DNA of 64,000 nt from positions 1 to 64,000 of the forward strand of contig JAADVB010000008.1 in NCBI GenBank assembly GCA_023334545.1, written 5' to 3'. This stretch comes from Salisapilia sapeloensis CBS 127946 (lineage: Eukaryota; Protista; Oomycota). Each line of letters starts with the position of its first letter. Position 1 is the first letter of the stretch. A program made the position numbers and the translations under genes. Under the pieces are notes generated by a model. That model worked only from the letters and a program-made list of their open reading frames with translations, was not told where the DNA came from and searched no databases. This document shows positions 47,924-55,091 of the stretch, in pieces.

Positions 47924-48803
47924 AAGATCTTGAAGGCGACGGATCTACTCGCTTGATAGTTTATCAGGACAGCAAGAAGGTGGCGTAATATAGCGAGACG
48001 ATGGCGTTGCCGTTTCGACGAACGTTTGTCGACGGGATCTATTAGCCACACTTTATTGACAAAAAGAGGGTGTTTCAAGAAGATAACATCCAGGAAGAGG
48101 TACGAAAGGGGTTTTGGAACCAGGTTACCAGTGTTGTGCTATCTTTAGATCTGCTTTAAACGTAAGCGTTTATGTTTGTCCAGCAAACGAAGGGAATGGA
48201 GAGGTATCATAGATACTTTGGGTGATAGGAAGGTTTCAGTGGGATGAGCTTGTCGAGCATAGCGTCTCAAGTGACGATGAGACCAACGTGTATCAATTTA
48301 CACTGCGTGGATACAACAAGAGAAATTGTGTAGTGATTATGCTAAAGTGTACGACATTCAGACGCAACCAAGCCGCTAAATCGCATGCAATACTAGCTTG
48401 AGTCAAACAGCACGGTACAATCTATCAAGATAGCCACCAGTACGTCGAACTATTCCGAATCCAGCCTTGCACATACCACCTAGCAATCTTGTCGTACCAA
48501 TATGTACTTGATACCCACTCTCCATCCAAGACCACTACGTCATTCCCATAAAAAACGCATGTACATCCATCCATCTCCTCGTTTGTCCATTACTCTCCAC
48601 TACCCTCCTCCTTTGTCAAATCCGGATTAGCTTGCTTGTCGTATAGAGCATCGTCTCCTTGCAAAAGAAAAAGTATTTGTAAAAAATTGAATAAAAACAT
48701 TCAGACTGGATATAAAAAAACATATACAAAAGGGCGATCTGGAGAAGGCGAAGGACGCCATTACTCAATCCGCCAAGTCGAGGACACGTCGGACCTGGTA
48801 AAG

Positions 48804-51800
48804 ATGTCCAAGCCTCGAGTCGGACTTAAAAGTACGAGTGAACTGCCGGCGTATGACCGTTTCCAGCCGCACGCGTCATCCAATGTCGATCCGTCCAAGC
48901 TAAGCGTCGCGCAGCGACTTGTCCTGGAGAATCGACAACGTGCGGCCGAGCGCAGTCGACGACGCAATACGAAGCAAGTGATTGAATCCCTGAATGCCAG
49001 TCCGGTGGAAGTCGGGGCGCAGATATGGGTGCCGGATGAGGAACAAGTGTGGAGGGCCGTGGAAATCGTATCCTACGGACAGGACCAGGAAAAGGGCATG
49101 GTGCTTGTCGTACGTGGCGCCAAGGGGGAAGAAGAGGTCGACATGCGGGACCTCGGAGACTTGTACCGAGTCAACCCCCGCGTCGTCGATGACATGACGT
49201 CGCTCTACTACATCCATGAAGCCGGTATCTTGGCGAATCTAGAAGCGAGGTCCAAGCCTGGACAATTGCGACCGTATACACTCATGGCGAACGTCTTGAT
49301 TGCCGTGAATCCGTTGGTCAAGACGGTGGAACCCAAGGTGGAGGATTATATTCAGACGCAGATGGGGGACCGACCGCCGCATCCGTACGCGATCGCTGAA
49401 GTTGCGTTCCAGCAAATGGCTTTACGTACGCCTGCAACGTGTCAGAGTATCGTGATTTCAGGAGAATCTGGTGCAGGCAAGACGGAAACGAGTAAGATCG
49501 TCTTGCGCTACTTGACGTCTCGAGAGTACTTGACGACGCCCAAGGAGCCCAAGATCGAGAGCAAGCACGTTGCGACGGAACTAGACCAGCGTCTATGGGA
49601 CACGAATCCGATTCTGGAAGCCTTTGGTAACGCCAAGACCTTGCGCAACCACAACAGTAGTCGATTCGGTAAGTTCATGAAGCTGCAATTCCGTCCAGAA
49701 GACAATGCACTATGTGGTGCGTTCGTCGAAACGTATTTGCTGGAAAAGTTCCGTGTCGTGGCGCAGATTCCGGGCGAACGTAACTTCCACGTCTTCTACT
49801 TCCTCCTGTCTGGTGCTCAGCACAGTATGAAGCAGCAGTTGGGGCTCTCGAAAGCACAGGACTATGCTTACTTGAACCAAAGTGGCATGTACACGGATAA
49901 AAATGTGGACGATGAGCTCTTGTTTGATGAACTCGTGAGTGCACTCAAGACGGTCGGAATTGACCATGAGCTGCAGCAGAGCGTCTTCTCCGTCCTCGCG
50001 ATGTTGCTTCACCTTGGTAACATCCGTCTCGATAATAAGGAGACGGCGGAAGGTGATGCAGGAGAAGTCACGAGCGACGGACAGAAGGCATTGGTTCAAT
50101 GCGCTAAGCTCTTGGGTGTGGAAGACAACGAGTTGCAGCGTGTCATTACCGTTCGTGAGATCACGACGAGAGGAGAGACGTTTACCATTCGTCGTAGTGG
50201 CAAAGAAGGCTCATACGTGCGTGACGCGATTGCCAAGGCCGTGTACGACCAGCTCTTCAAGTGGATCTTGTACCGCATTAACATGAGCTTGGGCCATGGC
50301 GACAACTCGCTTCCGTTCATCGGTGTCTTAGATATCTTTGGCTTTGAAAGCTTTGAAGAGAACGACTTTGAGCAGCTTTTGATCAACTATGCGAATGAAG
50401 CCCTGCAAGCAACGTTCAACCAGCAAGTGTTCATCGCAGAGCAAGAGCTGTTTGAGCAGGAAGGCATTGAAGTCGGTGAGATTGCTTGGCCAGATAATCG
50501 CGAGTGCATCAACTTGATTTCGAATAAACCTAACGGTATCCTTCCGTTGTTGGATCAAGAAGCCAAGACGCCTCAACCAAGTGACGAGAAGTGGAATGCG
50601 ACGTTGCATAAGACCCATGCTGGTCACCCGCACTTTTTACCGCCGCACGAGAAAGATAAAAAGTATGAGTTCATCATTAAGCACTTTGCGACGCGTGTGC
50701 CGTACCAAGTGGGTAACTTTATCGACAAGAATAACGATACGATCCCGAAGGACTTGCAGGACTTTGTCATGTCGAGCAAAGCGGACTTGATTAAGGAACT
50801 CTTTTCGAGTAAAGTTGAAGTCGAGATGCTCCATGGAGGTGTCTCGGCTGCACCCACTTCGAATGTGAATAAGAAGAAGCAGACGGTAGGTGCCAAGTTC
50901 TGTGATCAGATGCAAGATCTTGTGGATACATTGAACGCGACGCGTTGTAACTTTATTCGGTGCATTAAGCCGAATCCGACGATGACAGCAGGTGAGTTCG
51001 ATCGAGGGTACGTTGTCGATCAATTGCGATCCACAGGTATGCTAGCAACGTGTGAGCTCCTCAAGGTCGGTCTCCCGACACGTGTGTCGTACGAAGAGAT
51101 TTGTCGGATTTACAAACCTGCGCTACCTCCGTCCGTGACACCCATGTTCGAGCCTTACAACAATCGAACGTTCACGGAAGCTGTCTTGTGGTCGTTCCGA
51201 GTCGACCCAGACGCGTATCGTCTCGGACGAACGAAAGTGTTCTTTAAAACAGGCAAGATTGCTCTCCTCGATGCTCTCTTGAAGGTCGATATGGAGAAGA
51301 TGGGACCGTGGATTGTCTCTCGACTGCGCAAGTGGCTTGCACGTCGTCGATGGAGATATGCGACGGCCAAGGTGTTGGCGCAGAAAGCGTTTTTGTGGCT
51401 CTTGGAACGTAGCCGACAGCGAAAGCGAGCGATCCTCAAGATGCAAGCTGCGGTCCGCATGTTCCGTGCGAAGAAACAGTTCCTCAAGTATCGAAGTGCG
51501 CACCGTAATCGTATGCGACGTCGCGCAGCGATCAAGAAGAAGATGAAGGGCGCTGTACGTGCTATCCAGGCTGCGAGATGGTTCAACGACGTCCTATCGA
51601 AGATTCGTGTCGAGAAACAGCAGCAGCATGAAGCTGCGAGGAAGATGCAGGCGGTGGTGCGTGGTAAATTCGGTCGGAAGACTGCCGCGAGGAAGAGGCA
51701 GGCGATGCAGGAAGCAGAGCTTCGCAAGCGTCTGGAGCAAGAGGAGCATGAGCGTAAGCAGAGCGCACAGCGTCGATGGAAGGCGTTGTACGCGACTGTC

Positions 51801-53171
51801 AAAGCGCAGAAACACTTTGTCACTCTCTTGCACACGGTCCGGAAGCGTCGCGAGGCGGTGGAAGAAGCGCGACGTGTAGCGGATGAACAGGAGCGTCAGC
51901 GTCTGCAGCAAGAGGAAGAGGCTCGTAAGCGTCGTGAGCAGGAGGAAGAGGAACGTCAGAGGCAGTTGGCTCTGAAGAAGAACGAGGCAGCGCGTAAGAT
52001 TCAGCGCGCTTTCCGTGCGAAACTCGCCAAGGAAGATGCCAAGCGAGAGATTGCTCGTTTAGCGGCGTTGCAGACAAATGAAGAGGCTCAGCGAGCGTTG
52101 GAAGAGGCGGAGAGAGCGGCGCAAGAGGCCGAGATGGCGAAGCAGATGGAGAGCGATGCGTGGAACCAGTACAATTCGTGGGAAGAAGCGCATAAGCAGG
52201 TGGAGCCAGAGCTTCCGGAGAAAACGGAGGAGGATGCGAAGCGGGAGGAAGAGCTGGATCAGGCTGGCAAGGATATCTTTGGCGAAGAGGATGAAGGCCA
52301 TGGTCCGATGATGTCTGCTGAAGATGAGAACCAGATTAACCCAGTGAACCGCAGTCAGGAGTTCCCGACTGGTCCGCCGATTCCGTACAAGGGAGGTATC
52401 TTGACGTGCACGATGCTCGGTCATCGGAAGCAGCAGGATGAGAACTGGGGAGATGAGTACACGGAGTACGTCCTCCGTTTGACGTGGAGTCGAGACATCT
52501 TGGAGCAGAGTCAGACGGCGTGGCTAGTCGGTGGTCGATACAATGACTTTAACGCGTTGCATCAAGAGCTGAAGGCTGCTGCGAGTGGCGTGCGAGGGAA
52601 GAGAGCGCCGTGGTTCCCTCGATTCCCGAAGCGTCATCCGTTCTCGAGCATGTTGGGCAAGAACCAGGAAGAAAAGTTCATTATCAAGCGCGAAAAGGAG
52701 CTGAATCGATACATGACGCAGGTGTTGACGCAGATGCCGGATGCACTCCAGAACATCCATATGGACCGCTTTTTGAATTTGACGTGGCGGACGCAAGATA
52801 TCTCGGAGAGAGAGGCGTACGCTGAAGCGAGGCGTCGGTGGGAAGAGGAGGAGCAGCAGGCGATGGCGAATGCGGCGGAAGCAGAGCCGTTGTCGGAGGA
52901 AGAGCTGCAGGAGGTCGAGACGTTGGTGTCGCAGCTGACGCAAAAGGTGATCTATGCAGCGGGAGACGTGCGTCAGGACACGGAGCTGCAGGAGATGATT
53001 CACGCAGTCAAGGTGCTGCAGCCGAGGGTGAAGAAGACGGCGGATATCGGCGGACATGCGAATGTGGAGCTGATTCCGTTGGCGATGCAGCTGCAGGATG
53101 ACATTTCGGAGGCGTTTAGTCAGTACAATGATACGTTGCTGGCGCTACGTCTCGGACAGGACTTAAGCTGA
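48804..53171 (+). CDS. Myosin (myosin-VI-related) with IQ/SAH lever, PX domain and C-terminal GAT-like helical bundle
   Basis: Motor motifs GESGAGKT, NSSRFGK, DIFGFE and FIRCIKPN. IQ motifs and an E/R/K-rich helix follow. PX signature RYNDFNALHQELK...FPRFPK...REKELNRYMTQVL. Intronless; start placed at MSKPRVG. Confidence 0.95.
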   Translation: MSKPRVGLKSTSELPAYDRFQPHASSNVDPSKLSVAQRLVLENRQRAAERSRRRNTKQVIESLNASPVEVGAQIWVPDEEQVWRAVEIVSYGQDQEKGMVLVVRGAKGEEEVDMRDLGDLYRVNPRVVDDMTSLYYIHEAGILANLEARSKPGQLRPYTLMANVLIAVNPLVKTVEPKVEDYIQTQMGDRPPHPYAIAEVAFQQMALRTPATCQSIVISGESGAGKTETSKIVLRYLTSREYLTTPKEPKIESKHVATELDQRLWDTNPILEAFGNAKTLRNHNSSRFGKFMKLQFRPEDNALCGAFVETYLLEKFRVVAQIPGERNFHVFYFLLSGAQHSMKQQLGLSKAQDYAYLNQSGMYTDKNVDDELLFDELVSALKTVGIDHELQQSVFSVLAMLLHLGNIRLDNKETAEGDAGEVTSDGQKALVQCAKLLGVEDNELQRVITVREITTRGETFTIRRSGKEGSYVRDAIAKAVYDQLFKWILYRINMSLGHGDNSLPFIGVLDIFGFESFEENDFEQLLINYANEALQATFNQQVFIAEQELFEQEGIEVGEIAWPDNRECINLISNKPNGILPLLDQEAKTPQPSDEKWNATLHKTHAGHPHFLPPHEKDKKYEFIIKHFATRVPYQVGNFIDKNNDTIPKDLQDFVMSSKADLIKELFSSKVEVEMLHGGVSAAPTSNVNKKKQTVGAKFCDQMQDLVDTLNATRCNFIRCIKPNPTMTAGEFDRGYVVDQLRSTGMLATCELLKVGLPTRVSYEEICRIYKPALPPSVTPMFEPYNNRTFTEAVLWSFRVDPDAYRLGRTKVFFKTGKIALLDALLKVDMEKMGPWIVSRLRKWLARRRWRYATAKVLAQKAFLWLLERSRQRKRAILKMQAAVRMFRAKKQFLKYRSAHRNRMRRRAAIKKKMKGAVRAIQAARWFNDVLSKIRVEKQQQHEAARKMQAVVRGKFGRKTAARKRQAMQEAELRKRLEQEEHERKQSAQRRWKALYATVKAQKHFVTLLHTVRKRREAVEEARRVADEQERQRLQQEEEARKRREQEEEERQRQLALKKNEAARKIQRAFRAKLAKEDAKREIARLAALQTNEEAQRALEEAERAAQEAEMAKQMESDAWNQYNSWEEAHKQVEPELPEKTEEDAKREEELDQAGKDIFGEEDEGHGPMMSAEDENQINPVNRSQEFPTGPPIPYKGGILTCTMLGHRKQQDENWGDEYTEYVLRLTWSRDILEQSQTAWLVGGRYNDFNALHQELKAAASGVRGKRAPWFPRFPKRHPFSSMLGKNQEEKFIIKREKELNRYMTQVLTQMPDALQNIHMDRFLNLTWRTQDISEREAYAEARRRWEEEEQQAMANAAEAEPLSEEELQEVETLVSQLTQKVIYAAGDVRQDTELQEMIHAVKVLQPRVKKTADIGGHANVELIPLAMQLQDDISEAFSQYNDTLLALRLGQDLS

Positions 53172-53215
53172 TTTGTTTTCAATGGAAGGAACATGAATAA
53201 ATTTTCTTTTTCTCG

Positions 53216-53920
53216 TTACGGTTTAAAGTGTTTTGCGACGAGGAAGAGCTCGGAGGATTCCGGACGTGATGATGAAGGCTTGATACCTTTGACGCTTTCG
53301 AAGTGTTCCTTGAGATGAGATCGGAACGACTCGGAGTCTTCGCCTTTGAGGATCTTGGTGGCAAAGTGTCCGCCTGGAGCTAGGAAGAGGTGAGCCATCT
53401 GAAGCGCGTTGTGGCATAGTCGGAGCTGAGCTTGACTGTCTCGGAAAGTATTGCCGGAAAAGGATGGAGCCATGTCGCTTAAGAGGACATTTACCTTCCG
53501 GTGACCTAGTAGTCTATCGATCTCGTCGCGGATGGCGCGCTGACGGAAGTCTCCTACGACGACGCCAGCTCCTTCGATGCTTTCCATGTGGAGTAAGTCG
53601 ACGGCGACGACTTTGACGCCGTCTTTGGTGTCGTTATACTTTTTGCCTGTCGAACTCTCGACTGCTATCTGTGTCCAGCCGCCAGGAGCAGCACCTAGAT
53701 CGAGTACAAGGTCATTCTTCTTGATGATCTGATGCTTTTGGTTCAGTTCTCGCAGCTTGAGCGCCGCACGAGACCGTAGACCTTCGCGTTTGGCCTGTTT
53801 GACAGCCGGATCACGCCATTGACGACGTACCCATCGAGCACTGTTGCTCGACTTGCCTTTGAGACTCCGCTTTTCGCGTAGAATTCCAGTGGTTTGGATC
53901 ACGCACTGCCGAAATGACAT
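53216..53920 (-). CDS. MRM2: FtsJ/RrmJ rRNA 2'-O-methyltransferase, mitochondrial MRM2-like
   Basis: RSRAALKLREL, VLDLGAAPGGWTQ, LSDMAP, TKILKG and SRPESSELFL. Start placed at MSFRQC. Confidence 0.88.
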   Translation of the reverse strand: MSFRQCVIQTTGILREKRSLKGKSSNSARWVRRQWRDPAVKQAKREGLRSRAALKLRELNQKHQIIKKNDLVLDLGAAPGGWTQIAVESSTGKKYNDTKDGVKVVAVDLLHMESIEGAGVVVGDFRQRAIRDEIDRLLGHRKVNVLLSDMAPSFSGNTFRDSQAQLRLCHNALQMAHLFLAPGGHFATKILKGEDSESFRSHLKEHFESVKGIKPSSSRPESSELFLVAKHFKP

Positions 53921-54017
53921 GATGTTTCGTTGTATCGTTTGGTGTCCAATTGATCTCGTAGAGTTTTGCCCCGATAGCAGATGGAAATTCGTATCGACGC
54001 ACAAGATAGAAGACGGT

Positions 54018-55091
54018 ATGCAGCTCTCACCGTATCTGAAGATGGCATTTATGCTTGGTGTGGGATTACTGGTGTGTCCTAGCAACTTGCTTATTGCTGC
54101 ATCGAAAGAAAATAGGAAGTCTGTGCCGTACTCGAGCGCAACGGTAATCTTGCTCACGGAGGTGACCAAGCTGACGATAGCATTGGGTTGCGTCATCGCC
54201 ACAGCGACGTCCATACCTACGAAGATTGCATTTAAAGACCTCGTTGCATTTGCATTGCCTGCGTCTCTTTATGCGGTGGATAACAATCTTACGTTCACGG
54301 TGCTCCGGTATCTCGATCCGGCTAGTGTTGCTGTGCTGTGGAATCTTCGCATCGTCGCCACCGCAATTCTCTTTCGTCTCGTTTTCCATGCGCAGCCTTC
54401 CTCGATACAGAACGCAGCTATACTGTTACTAGTCCTCGGGGCTTTTATCACACAATCGGATCATGCGACTCAAAAGGATGATGCGTCCGAGGCAGTAGAA
54501 GGTGAATGGACGACGGGTATCCTACTCTTATTGACTGGTATCATGGTGTCGTCCTTCGCGAGCGTATATGCGGAATGGACATTGAAAACGCGCACGGAAA
54601 TACCGTTCGTGTGGCAAAACGTTATACTCTACACCTTCGGCGTACTGTTTAACAGTGTTGGTGTCTTTACCAACTACCAAGATGTAGCAGAAGACGGCTT
54701 CTTCCATGACTACAACTATTATGCGATAGCAATTATTCTAGTAGACAGTCTTGTTGGGATCGCCATGGCCGCGTTGCTCAAGTACATGGACAACATTGCA
54801 TGTATCTACTCTCACGCTCTCGCCATGATCTTCACAGCCCTCTTCTCCATCGTATTTTTCTCCTTTTCGCTATCACTCGACTTTGTCTGTGGTCTCGGCG
54901 TCATCCTCACGTCTCTCTATCTGTACCATGCAGAAGGTTTTTCAGATGAGAACAGCACCTCGAGTTCTTCAAAGACGACAGAGACGGAGAATGAATTGGA
55001 CGTCGAGGTACAGGAGAAAGGCGAGAGAAACAAGTATTTGCAAGTAGCGGATCAAACACCAGAAGTCAAGCAAGTGGTAGTGGACGAATAG
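54018..55091 (+). CDS. Nucleotide-sugar transporter, SLC35A family
   Basis: VILLTEVTKL, FALPASLYAVDNNL, LWNLRIVATAILF, FASVYAEWTLK and LLKYMDNI; about 10 hydrophobic segments. Confidence 0.9.
   Translation: MQLSPYLKMAFMLGVGLLVCPSNLLIAASKENRKSVPYSSATVILLTEVTKLTIALGCVIATATSIPTKIAFKDLVAFALPASLYAVDNNLTFTVLRYLDPASVAVLWNLRIVATAILFRLVFHAQPSSIQNAAILLLVLGAFITQSDHATQKDDASEAVEGEWTTGILLLLTGIMVSSFASVYAEWTLKTRTEIPFVWQNVILYTFGVLFNSVGVFTNYQDVAEDGFFHDYNYYAIAIILVDSLVGIAMAALLKYMDNIACIYSHALAMIFTALFSIVFFSFSLSLDFVCGLGVILTSLYLYHAEGFSDENSTSSSSKTTETENELDVEVQEKGERNKYLQVADQTPEVKQVVVDE

What the first reader, a model, noticed from the sequence alone, without database searches (positions are those of the whole stretch)
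52390..53168. PX + GAT-like tail: a myosin-VI/TOM1 Rosetta-stone fusion
The tail has a PX domain (phosphoinositide binding) followed by a three-helix segment ending ...ELIPLAMQLQDDISEAFSQYND, which resembles the GAT domains of TOM1/GGA (ubiquitin binding). In animals myosin VI binds the VHS-GAT adaptor TOM1 for endosome and autophagosome traffic. Here motor, lipid sensor and putative ubiquitin reader appear in one polypeptide: a self-contained motor for ubiquitinated endosomal cargo. The GAT call is by-eye inference.
Basis: partly seen in the sequence, partly recalled or inferred. Interest (0 to 1): 0.75.

Follow-up and report, generated by a model that had tools for sequence, protein, structure and literature searches.

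The report
Oomycete myosin with PX–GAT-like tail
A water-mould motor protein ends in a lipid-binding PX domain followed by a small three-helix bundle that looks like the GAT domain of the endosomal sorting adaptors TOM1 and GGA, but whether that bundle reads ubiquitin is unproven and its best-known ubiquitin contacts are not kept.

Summary
Bases 52392-53168 encode the last 259 residues of one intronless myosin gene (ATG 48804, stop 53171, 1455 aa). It has the published class-XXX myosin layout, and 24 oomycete orthologues were found.

- **PX domain:** it passes Pfam's threshold and keeps the PI3P-binding side chains. It is the most conserved part of the protein.
- **GAT-like bundle:** the last ~90 residues fold confidently as a three-helix bundle.
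  - Pfam GAT is the top hit but below threshold (24.3 vs 31 bits, E 3.6e-5). Members only ~30% identical hit it in the same register.
  - TOM1/GGA GAT domains lead the Foldseek, VIA-align and ESM Atlas shape and feature searches.
  - An exhaustive profile search found only PX-linked relatives, with and without a motor, and no VHS-GAT protein.
- **Homology estimate:** I put true GAT homology at about 0.8.
- **Ubiquitin binding:** not shown. Mapped onto GGA3, the site-1 hydrophobic contacts are Gln, Lys and Glu or a gap. The site-2 Leu276 position stays hydrophobic.
- **Motor:** most similar to myosin VI among solved myosins, including the insert-2 region.
- **"Rosetta stone" reading:** only an analogy. 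There is no VHS domain, and animal myosin VI binds a different part of TOM1.
the scan had already noted a second GAT-like-tailed myosin elsewhere in this genome (s1-289022).

The parts
48804..53171 (+). Complete intronless coding sequence of the myosin (1455 aa from the ATG, stop at 53169-53171).
   Evidence: ORF. The ATG at ORF codon 57 matches the starts of the orthologues. A gap-free contig of a related organism covers 48724-53177.
49185..51248 (+). Myosin motor domain.
   Evidence: Pfam Myosin_head, E 3.7e-205, full length 1-679/679. The best solved relatives are myosin VI at 506 bits, against 455 bits for myosin Va.
51258..51479 (+). Post-converter segment that aligns with the myosin VI insert-2 and first IQ region.
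   Evidence: phmmer of window:51033-51515 against PDB: best hits are myosin VI chains 8w41_A and 2bki_A, residues 692-832, E 3e-15 to 8e-15. This is the subject of another scan note, s1-288934.
51441..52295 (+). Neck and charged helical region. IQ-like motifs lie at ORF codons 936, 1004 and 1122. Glu/Arg/Lys-rich stretches carry few hydrophobic residues, which is more like a single alpha-helix than a coiled coil.
   Evidence: Composition and motif script. A weak Pfam IQ hit. This is the least conserved part of the protein, 22-48%.
52398..52778 (+). PX domain. The Pfam match is 52506-52778, and the predicted strands begin at 52398.
   Evidence: Pfam PX above its cut-off. The nearest solved relatives are the Nischarin, SGK3 and SNX PX domains. 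Invariant in 24 orthologues are R49 and Y50, the loop FPRFPKR with K80 and R81, and R100. These correspond to the four PtdIns3P side chains defined in PMC6449406.
52755..52868 (+). Long linker helix between PX and the bundle.
   Evidence: AlphaFold2 model of the whole tail, helix at tail residues 122-159. It is 70-81% conserved.
52896..53165 (+). GAT-like three-helix bundle. The Pfam GAT match is 52965-53138.
   Evidence: AF2 pLDDT 84. Pfam GAT E 3.6e-5. Foldseek, VIA-align and ESM Atlas top hits are TOM1/GGA GAT domains. The alignment to GGA1 and GGA3 GAT is collinear.

Best explanation
This is an oomycete class-XXX-type unconventional myosin. [quoted passage not shown]

Proposed mechanism, with what is shown and what is inferred:
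- PX domain docks the tail on PI3P-rich endosomal or vacuolar membranes. Inferred from the conserved binding residues, about 0.75.
- The GAT-like bundle binds a protein ligand on the same membrane, so the motor is recruited by coincidence of a lipid and a protein. Inferred.
- Fold and domain order are shown. GAT homology is probable, about 0.8.
- The ligand is open. Ubiquitin is possible, about 0.3. If so, binding is more likely through the helix 2/3 face (the GGA3 Leu276 position is Ile or Val here) than through the classical helix 1/2 site, which is polar here.
- A helical peptide partner, or pairing with another GAT-like bundle, is at least as likely. TOM1-Tollip, GGA-Rabaptin5 and the ESCRT-0 core are precedents.
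- The lever is followed by ER/K-rich helix rather than a strong coiled coil. The motor resembles myosin VI, so cargo-induced pairing of motors is plausible. Direction of movement was not tested.
For: - Architecture: motor, IQ motifs and PX by Pfam. It matches the published class-XXX description of SH3-like N-terminus, IQ motifs, coiled coil and PX in Phytophthora and Hyaloperonospora (PMC2375034; PMC3942036).
- PX: above threshold, and the lipid-binding residues are invariant in 24 orthologues. It is the most conserved region, 84-94%.
- Bundle fold: confident AF2 model.
- Bundle, sequence evidence: Pfam GAT is the top hit in 19 of 20 orthologues. It is the top or only hit, in the same register, for members about 30% identical: P0027 E 8.8e-4, P0026 2.8e-3, P0032 3.3e-3.
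- Bundle, structure evidence: 9 of the top 12 Foldseek PDB hits are GGA1, GGA3 or Tom1 GAT, at TM 0.5-0.75 and rmsd 2.4-3 over about 83 columns for the Tom1/GGA3 chains, rmsd near 8 for three GGA1 chains. VIA-align rank 1 of 48,161 chains is Tom1 GAT 2n9d, Z 11.2, rmsd 2.5, 89 of 95 residues. The top ESM Atlas shape hit is plant VHS-GAT proteins, TM 0.75, followed by GGA3 and GGA2.
- Bundle, language-model evidence: the three nearest named ESM feature clusters all carry PF03127, both for this protein and for the paralogue P0035.
- Bundle, alignment: hhalign gives a collinear alignment over all three helices, with identities at V30, L33, E52, P62, A68, Q84, D87 and Y96.
- Cassette: all 20 relatives whose whole sequence was scanned with Pfam either carry a PX domain in front of the bundle (15 of them) or are fragments of 135-222 aa with no Pfam hit (5). 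The PX-carrying ones include three myosins and motor-less oomycete proteins.
Against: - The GAT score is 6.7 bits below Pfam's gathering cut-off.
- The exhaustive HMMER profile search found no VHS-GAT protein among its 29 hits.
- PDB profile searches did not hit GGA or Tom1.
- hhalign against single GGA sequences gives only E 0.06-0.07.
- Designed and spectrin-type three-helix bundles reach Z 9-10.8, close to Tom1's 11.2, so structure alone does not discriminate.
- GGA3 site-1 ubiquitin contacts are not conserved.
- The strict Lys of the PX PxxPxK loop is Arg, with a Lys next to it.
- The PX part of the whole-tail model has low confidence, pLDDT 41-69.
- There are no experimental data for this protein or any orthologue in the papers searched.
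Confidence: 0.6

Rival explanations
1. The bundle is a functional ubiquitin-binding GAT domain, so the protein is a self-contained motor for ubiquitinated endosomal cargo that reads PI3P and ubiquitin in one chain. It would be a fused equivalent of the animal myosin VI-TOM1 pair.
For: The GAT-like fold and probable homology. GAT domains of GGA and TOM1 bind ubiquitin (PMC7721868; PMC6673701). The position of GGA3 Leu276, whose mutation abolishes ubiquitin binding (PMC2064599), is Ile or Val here, and Leu280 maps to an invariant Met. Even the sequence-unrelated syntaxin Habc bundle binds ubiquitin (PMC7721868). The motor is the closest solved relative of myosin VI.
Against: The site-1 hydrophobic contacts L227, M231 and L247 of GGA3 map to Gln32, Lys36 and Glu49 or a gap. 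Only Glu250 is matched, by Glu52. There is no VHS domain and no other ubiquitin-binding motif by Pfam. Residues 79 and 83 could simply be core residues, because exposure could not be computed. No binding data exist.
Confidence: 0.3
2. The bundle is GAT-like but works as a protein-protein or pairing module rather than a ubiquitin reader. It would bind a helical peptide of an endosomal adaptor, or pair with the bundle of another copy or of the motor-less PX-GAT-like paralogues, and so recruit or dimerise the motor.
For: The polar site 1. The highest structural scores are to the Tom1 GAT domain, including its Tollip complex 9kzn (Foldseek TM 0.62, rmsd 2.4; VIA Z 10.3) and the GGA1-Rabaptin5 complex 1x79. 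The same organisms encode motor-less proteins with the same cassette. The neck lacks a strong coiled coil, so pairing would have to come from the tail. From my own knowledge, the ESCRT-0 core is built from two intertwined GAT domains.
Against: No partner is identified. No multimer model could be run. It does not exclude ubiquitin binding as well.
Confidence: 0.4
3. The bundle is a generic three-helix bundle that is not homologous to GAT. It would be a lineage-specific helical extension that packs on or regulates the PX domain, and the GAT resemblance would be convergent.
For: The Pfam score is sub-threshold. No link to VHS-GAT proteins came from HMMER or PDB profile searches. hhalign E 0.06-0.12. 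Many unrelated bundles reach Z 9-10.8. The domain is always tied to a PX domain.
Against: Four different methods put GAT first. Pfam GAT recurs as the top or only hit, in the same register, in members about 30% identical. Identities fall on positions that GGA1, GGA3 and this family all share in the alignments: the Pro after helix 2, the Ala of the loop, Gln and Asp of helix 3, and the final Tyr. Sequence identity to GAT chains is 14-19%, against mostly 4-13% (a few up to 15%) for the other bundles.
Confidence: 0.2

Closest known systems
Class-XXX myosins of Phytophthora and Hyaloperonospora (Odronitz & Kollmar 2007, PMC2375034; Sebe-Pedros et al. 2014, PMC3942036)
   Same: Oomycete host, an N-terminal SH3-like region, IQ motifs, a helical or coiled region, and a C-terminal PX domain. 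The orthologues found are annotated oomycete myosins.
   Different: The published descriptions stop at the PX domain. The conserved ~90-residue GAT-like bundle behind it is not mentioned in the papers I could search. Class membership rests on architecture here, because no tree was built.
GAT domains of TOM1 and GGA1-3 (Pfam PF03127; PDB 2n9d, 1wrd, 9kzn, 1naf, 1x79, 1yd8, 1wr6)
   Same: A three-helix bundle of the same size and topology, best structural match rmsd 2.3-2.7 over 81-89 residues. The sequence alignment is collinear with shared Pro, Ala, Gln, Asp and Tyr positions. Pfam GAT is the top hit.
   Different: The score is below the Pfam cut-off. There is no VHS domain in front and no GGA N-GAT Arf hook detected. 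It follows a PX domain instead. Site-1 ubiquitin contacts are replaced by polar residues. It is not retrieved reciprocally by profile searches.
Animal myosin VI with its adaptor TOM1 (PMC6673701)
   Same: An endosome-directed motor coupled to a GAT domain. The motor here is most similar to myosin VI among solved myosins, and its post-converter segment aligns with insert 2.
   Different: [quoted passage not shown] This protein has no myosin VI cargo-binding domain by Pfam, and its GAT-like domain is covalently attached behind a PX domain. Minus-end movement is untested.
PX proteins with a helical C-terminal module, such as sorting nexins like SNX15 (PX plus the three-helix MIT domain); named from my own knowledge
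   Same: A PX domain followed by a small helical bundle that adds a protein-binding function to lipid binding.
   Different: MIT, PXC and PXB families did not appear among the Pfam or top fold hits, while GAT did. No sorting nexin carries a motor.

Membership tests
PX domain (PF00787) | Match to the family profile above the curated cut-off | tested here: met
   44 bits against 21.6 for the tail, 41 bits for the whole protein, profile positions 4-82 of 84.
PX domain (PF00787), PtdIns3P-binding subgroup | Four key side chains: Arg and Tyr/Phe at the strand 3 / helix 1 junction, Lys of the PsiPxxPxK loop, and Arg in helix 2 (PMC6449406) | tested here: inconclusive
   R49, Y50 and R100 (tail numbering) are present and invariant. 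The loop reads FPRFPKR, so the strict Lys position is Arg81 with Lys80 next to it, and both are invariant. Lipid binding itself is not testable here.
GAT domain (PF03127) | Match to the family profile above the curated cut-off (31 bits) | tested here: not met
   The best score is 24.3 bits, E 3.6e-5. GAT is still the top-ranked family in 19 of 20 orthologues and in several distant members.
GAT domain (PF03127) | Up-down-up three-helix bundle superposable on solved GAT domains | tested here: met
   Tom1 2n9d Z 11.2, rmsd 2.5, 89 residues. GGA1 1naf Z 9.9, rmsd 2.3. Foldseek and ESM Atlas top hits are GAT domains. This is not discriminating on its own, since other bundles reach Z 9-10.8.
GAT domain (PF03127) | Reciprocal sequence link to bona fide VHS-GAT or GGA proteins | tested here: not met
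   An exhaustive HMMER search with profile A2 gave 29 hits; none of the 20 scanned with Pfam is a VHS-GAT protein. PDB profile searches gave no GGA or Tom1 chain. hhalign against single GGA1 and GGA3 sequences gave E 0.06-0.07.
GAT domain (PF03127) | Ubiquitin site 1 (GGA3 L227, M231, L247, E246, E250) | tested here: not met
   These map to Q32, K36, a gap or E49, E49 or T48, and E52. The GGA3 numbering was validated against the residue list in PMC7721868.
GAT domain (PF03127) | Ubiquitin site 2 (GGA3 L276; its L276A mutant does not bind ubiquitin) | tested here: inconclusive
   L276 maps to I79 (Ile or Val in the family) and L280 maps to M83. Whether these are exposed or in the core could not be computed.
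TOM1 / GGA adaptor families | N-terminal VHS domain before the GAT domain, plus a myosin VI-binding motif (TOM1) or an appendage domain (GGA) | tested here: not met
   No VHS, GGA_N-GAT or adaptin-ear match in the whole protein at E up to 1.
Myosin class XXX | Domain order of SH3-like N-terminus, motor, IQ motifs, coiled or helical region, PX; oomycete distribution | tested here: met
   The SH3-like region is only a weak Pfam match, E 0.77. Phylogenetic placement was not tested.
Myosin class VI | Insert 2 (reverse gear) after the converter | tested here: inconclusive
   The post-converter segment aligns best to myosin VI residues 692-832 including insert 2, E 8e-15, with the W-L-x3-R-W motif shared. 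Function and calmodulin binding are untested.
Myosin class VI | Myosin VI cargo-binding domain in the tail | tested here: not met
   No such Pfam match. The tail is PX plus a GAT-like bundle.

The most novel reading that the evidence does not exclude
Oomycetes carry a myosin-VI-like, possibly minus-end-directed motor that reads both PI3P (through PX) and ubiquitin (through a VHS-less GAT domain) in one chain. A portable PX-GAT cassette would also exist without a motor in the same cells. That would be an ESCRT-0/TOM1-like ubiquitin-sorting function wired directly to actin transport, arising independently of, or before, the animal myosin VI-TOM1 partnership.
Probability: 0.2. Interest if true: 0.75.

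Novelty: new variant of a known kind. Interest (0 to 1): 0.5.

Why it matters
PX-tailed oomycete myosins have been catalogued since 2007, but nothing is known about what they carry. A conserved GAT-like bundle behind the PX domain gives a concrete, testable cargo-recognition model of PI3P plus a protein ligand. The organisms include major plant pathogens in which PI3P biology is prominent.

It also extends the GAT fold to a new context: no VHS domain, paired with PX, attached to a motor or free-standing. Together with the myosin-VI-like motor features, it raises the question of whether coupling a myosin-VI-type motor to GAT-based endosomal sorting is ancient or convergent.

If the bundle does not bind ubiquitin, the finding is simply a previously unannotated domain in a known myosin class.

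Tried and rejected
- **Sequence searches against solved structures.** Single-sequence and profile searches of the bundle gave no GAT hit. The best hits were designed helical proteins and a dehydrogenase, which I take as spurious.
- **hhalign of family alignment A3 against single GGA sequences.** The alignment is collinear but the E-values are weak, 0.063 and 0.074. The tool showed them 100% identical to chains 1x79_A and 1yd8_G.
- **Building a proper GAT profile.** A word search with the GGA1 bait returned mostly exon fragments with intron read-through that lack helix 3. The trimmed profile was too shallow, and hhalign gave E 0.12. The profile-profile test therefore remains undone.
- **Whole-tail AlphaFold2 model.** The bundle is confident, but the PX part (pLDDT 41-69) and the domain packing (pTM 0.49) are not usable.
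- **Zinc finger of the motor-less paralogues.** I suspected a ubiquitin-binding NZF/RanBP2 finger. Pfam gives only generic zinc-ribbon hits, so I rejected that idea.
- **Sequencing runs.** All holders are contigs whose RNA status is a guess. They show a gap-free, transcript-sized contig but cannot prove expression.
Full report
**What is at the coordinates**

The finding covers the last 259 codons of one open reading frame, 48636..53171 on the + strand. Aligning the N-terminus with orthologues puts the real start at the ATG of ORF codon 57, nt 48804. That gives an intronless protein of 1455 residues.

A word search with the tail found 24 full-length oomycete myosins whose tails are 71-87% identical. 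They come from Phytophthora, Pythium, Lagenidium, Saprolegnia, Achlya, Aphanomyces and Albugo. The window is therefore from an oomycete, and none of the hits is the window's own protein.

In sequencing-run contigs, one gap-free 4,493-nt contig covers 48724-53177. It comes from a related organism (181 substitutions) and carries a sequencing adapter just past the stop. That fits a single unspliced message, although the run's RNA status is only a guess.

The neighbours are ordinary housekeeping genes: an HMG-box protein, phosphoglycerate kinase, an FtsJ methyltransferase and a nucleotide-sugar transporter.

**Domain anatomy**

| Part | Location | Evidence |
|---|---|---|
| Motor | ORF residues 184-871 | Pfam Myosin_head, E 3.7e-205 |
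| Neck | ORF codons 936, 1004, 1122 | IQ-like motifs; a weak Pfam IQ hit at 931-949 |
| Charged helical region | about ORF 1011-1220 | Glu/Arg/Lys-rich helix with only 10-17% hydrophobic residues in most 30-residue windows, more like a single alpha-helix than a coiled coil |
| PX domain | ORF residues 1291-1381 | Pfam PX, 41-44 bits against a cut-off of 21.6 |

This is the layout published for class-XXX myosins of Phytophthora and Hyaloperonospora: an SH3-like N-terminus, IQ motifs, a coiled coil and a PX domain (PMC2375034). PX tails in P. infestans myosins are also noted in PMC3942036.

**The PX domain**

In the 24-sequence tail alignment these residues are invariant:
- R49 and Y50, in the motif GGRYNDF
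- K80 and R81, in the loop FPRFPKR
- R100, in IKREKELNRY

They correspond to the four side chains that Chandra et al. found strictly required for PtdIns3P binding (PMC6449406). One caveat applies: the strict Lys position of PsiPxxPxK is Arg81, with Lys80 beside it.

The PX region is the most conserved part of the whole protein, at 84-94% identity to six orthologues against 67-79% for the motor. PI3P binding is therefore a strong inference, but it is not shown.

**The C-terminal bundle: evidence that it is GAT-like**

AlphaFold2 on 20 orthologues folds the last 110 residues with mean pLDDT 84. It gives a short N-terminal helix and three long helices at residues 20-38, 48-69 and 78-109. Five kinds of evidence point to GAT:

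1. **Pfam.** GAT (PF03127) is the top hit for the isolated domain: E 3.6e-5, 24.3 bits, profile positions 19-75 of 77.
   - It matches 19 of 20 orthologues.
   - Among relatives only about 30% identical it is again the top or only hit, ending in the same register: P0027 E 8.8e-4, P0026 2.8e-3, P0032 3.3e-3.
2. **Foldseek against the PDB.** Nine of the top twelve hits are GGA1, GGA3 or Tom1 GAT domains, at TM 0.5-0.75; the Tom1 and GGA3 chains superpose at rmsd 2.4-3 over about 83 columns, three GGA1 chains only at rmsd near 8. The E-values are weak, 0.1-0.6.
3. **VIA-align.** This is independent of Foldseek. It ranks Tom1 GAT (2n9d) first of 48,161 chains, with Z 11.2, rmsd 2.5 and 89 of 95 residues aligned. 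Tom1-Tollip and two GGA1 entries are also in the top nine.
4. **ESM Atlas shape search.** Plant VHS-GAT proteins come first (TM 0.75, 102 residues aligned), then GGA3 and GGA2.
5. **Language-model feature search.** The three nearest named clusters all carry PF03127. This holds for the window's domain (0.88, 0.86, 0.85) and for the paralogous myosin P0035 (0.79-0.77).

**The C-terminal bundle: evidence against a firm GAT call**

- The Pfam score is 6.7 bits under the gathering cut-off.
- An exhaustive HMMER search of 1.84 billion representatives with the orthologue profile gave 29 hits and no VHS-GAT protein.
- Profile searches of PDB sequences never hit GGA or Tom1.
- hhalign of the broader family alignment (A3, 29 sequences down to 26% identity) against single GGA1 or GGA3 GAT sequences gave only E 0.063 and 0.074.
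- My attempt to build a real GAT profile failed because the word search returned exon fragments.
- Designed, spectrin-type and syntaxin Habc bundles reach Z 9-10.8, so the fold alone does not discriminate.

Weighing the concordance of independent methods, and the recurrence of the same Pfam family in the same register across divergent members, I put true GAT homology at about 0.8. A GAT-type fold is at about 0.9.

**Ubiquitin-binding residues**

In the GGA3 chain, L227, M231, E246, L247, E250 and L276 all fall on the right letters with a single offset. That validates the numbering against PMC7721868 and PMC2064599.

Both hhalign alignments are collinear over the three helices. Identities fall at V30, L33, E52, P62, A68, Q84, D87 and Y96. 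On the GGA3 alignment:

| GGA3 residue | Site | Residue here |
|---|---|---|
| L227 | 1 | Gln32 |
| M231 | 1 | Lys36 (invariant in orthologues) |
| L247 | 1 | a gap next to Leu50 (Glu49 in the GGA1-anchored register) |
| E250 | 1 | Glu52 |
| L276 | 2 | Ile79 (Ile or Val in the family) |
| L280 | 2 | Met83 |

The classical helix 1/2 hydrophobic pocket for ubiquitin Ile44 is thus not preserved. L276, whose alanine mutant no longer binds ubiquitin, sits at a position that stays hydrophobic. Residues 79 and 83 may simply be core residues, and I could not compute exposure. Ubiquitin binding is therefore possible, at about 0.3, but not supported by residue conservation.

**The cassette**

I scanned the whole sequences of 20 of the 29 relatives found by the exhaustive search with Pfam. 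Fifteen carry a PX domain in front of the bundle and the other five are fragments of 135-222 aa with no Pfam hit. The PX-carrying relatives fall into two groups:
- three myosins: P0027, P0035 and P0041
- motor-less proteins of 460-510 residues from Phytophthora capsici, P. citrophthora, Peronospora belbahrii and Bremia lactucae, plus a 320-residue protein from Peronosclerospora sorghi

The P. capsici protein and the tail of myosin P0035 share 40% identity over a CxxC...CxxC zinc ribbon, the PX domain and the bundle. By Pfam the zinc ribbon is generic, not an NZF finger.

PX plus the GAT-like bundle is thus a conserved unit that occurs with and without a motor.

**The myosin VI comparison**

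Among solved myosins the motor is most similar to myosin VI, at 506 bits against 455 for myosin Va. The segment after the converter aligns best to myosin VI residues 692-832, which include insert 2 (E 8e-15). This agrees with scan note s1-288934.

The analogy is therefore better founded than I expected, but it remains an analogy:
- The tail has no myosin VI cargo-binding domain and no VHS domain.
- Animal myosin VI binds TOM1 residues 437-463, and TOM1 215-392, which holds the GAT domain, does not bind it (PMC6673701).
- Direction of movement is untested.

**Novelty**

The papers I could search on myosin classification describe the PX tail but not a GAT-like domain. Those surveys used Pfam's gathering threshold, which this domain does not reach. 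I rate it a new variant of a known kind: a known myosin class with a previously unannotated, VHS-less GAT-like domain that forms a PX-GAT cassette.

**Mechanism I commit to**

The PX domain docks the tail on PI3P membranes. The bundle adds a protein contact, which may be ubiquitin through the helix 2/3 face or a helical partner or pairing interaction. The motor is then recruited, and perhaps paired, by coincidence of lipid and protein. Overall confidence is 0.6. The fold, the domain order and the conservation are shown. All binding activities are inferred.

Noticed in passing
window 51258-51479: The segment after the converter aligns best with the myosin VI insert-2 and first IQ region (2bki_A residues 692-832, E 8e-15). 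The whole motor scores highest against myosin VI among solved myosins. This is the subject of scan note s1-288934.
   Followed up: partly
P0032, P0037, P0040, P0044, P0048, P0053 (oomycete proteins, not in the window): Motor-less proteins of about 320-510 residues from Phytophthora, Peronospora, Bremia and Peronosclerospora carry the same PX plus GAT-like cassette. In several (P0032, P0037, P0048) it is preceded by a CxxC...CxxC zinc ribbon and a short N-terminal L-x-x-G-x-L-T-x-x-E-Y-D-E-L motif. P0032 is 40% identical to the tail of myosin P0035.
   Followed up: partly
window 51666-52295: The region called 'coiled coil' in the literature is Glu/Arg/Lys-rich with only 10-17% hydrophobic residues in most 30-residue windows, and it is the least conserved part (22-48%). 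It looks more like a single alpha-helix spacer than a dimerising coiled coil.
   Followed up: partly
window 53171-53216: The stop codon of the myosin and the stop codon of the convergent FtsJ-like methyltransferase ORF are only 44 nt apart, so the 3' ends of the two genes must nearly touch or overlap. Contigs from runs X1 and X2 run across both genes.
   Followed up: no
window 53844-54214: The long ORFs of the FtsJ methyltransferase (- strand, Pfam domain only in residues 147-330) and of the nucleotide-sugar transporter (+ strand) overlap by about 370 nt. The true FtsJ start is probably an internal Met.
   Followed up: no
window 48724-53177 (run X6): A related organism ('organism B', about 96% identical, substitutions mostly transitions, no indels) has a transcript-sized contig that matches the gene from 80 nt before the ATG to 6 nt after the stop.
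   Followed up: partly
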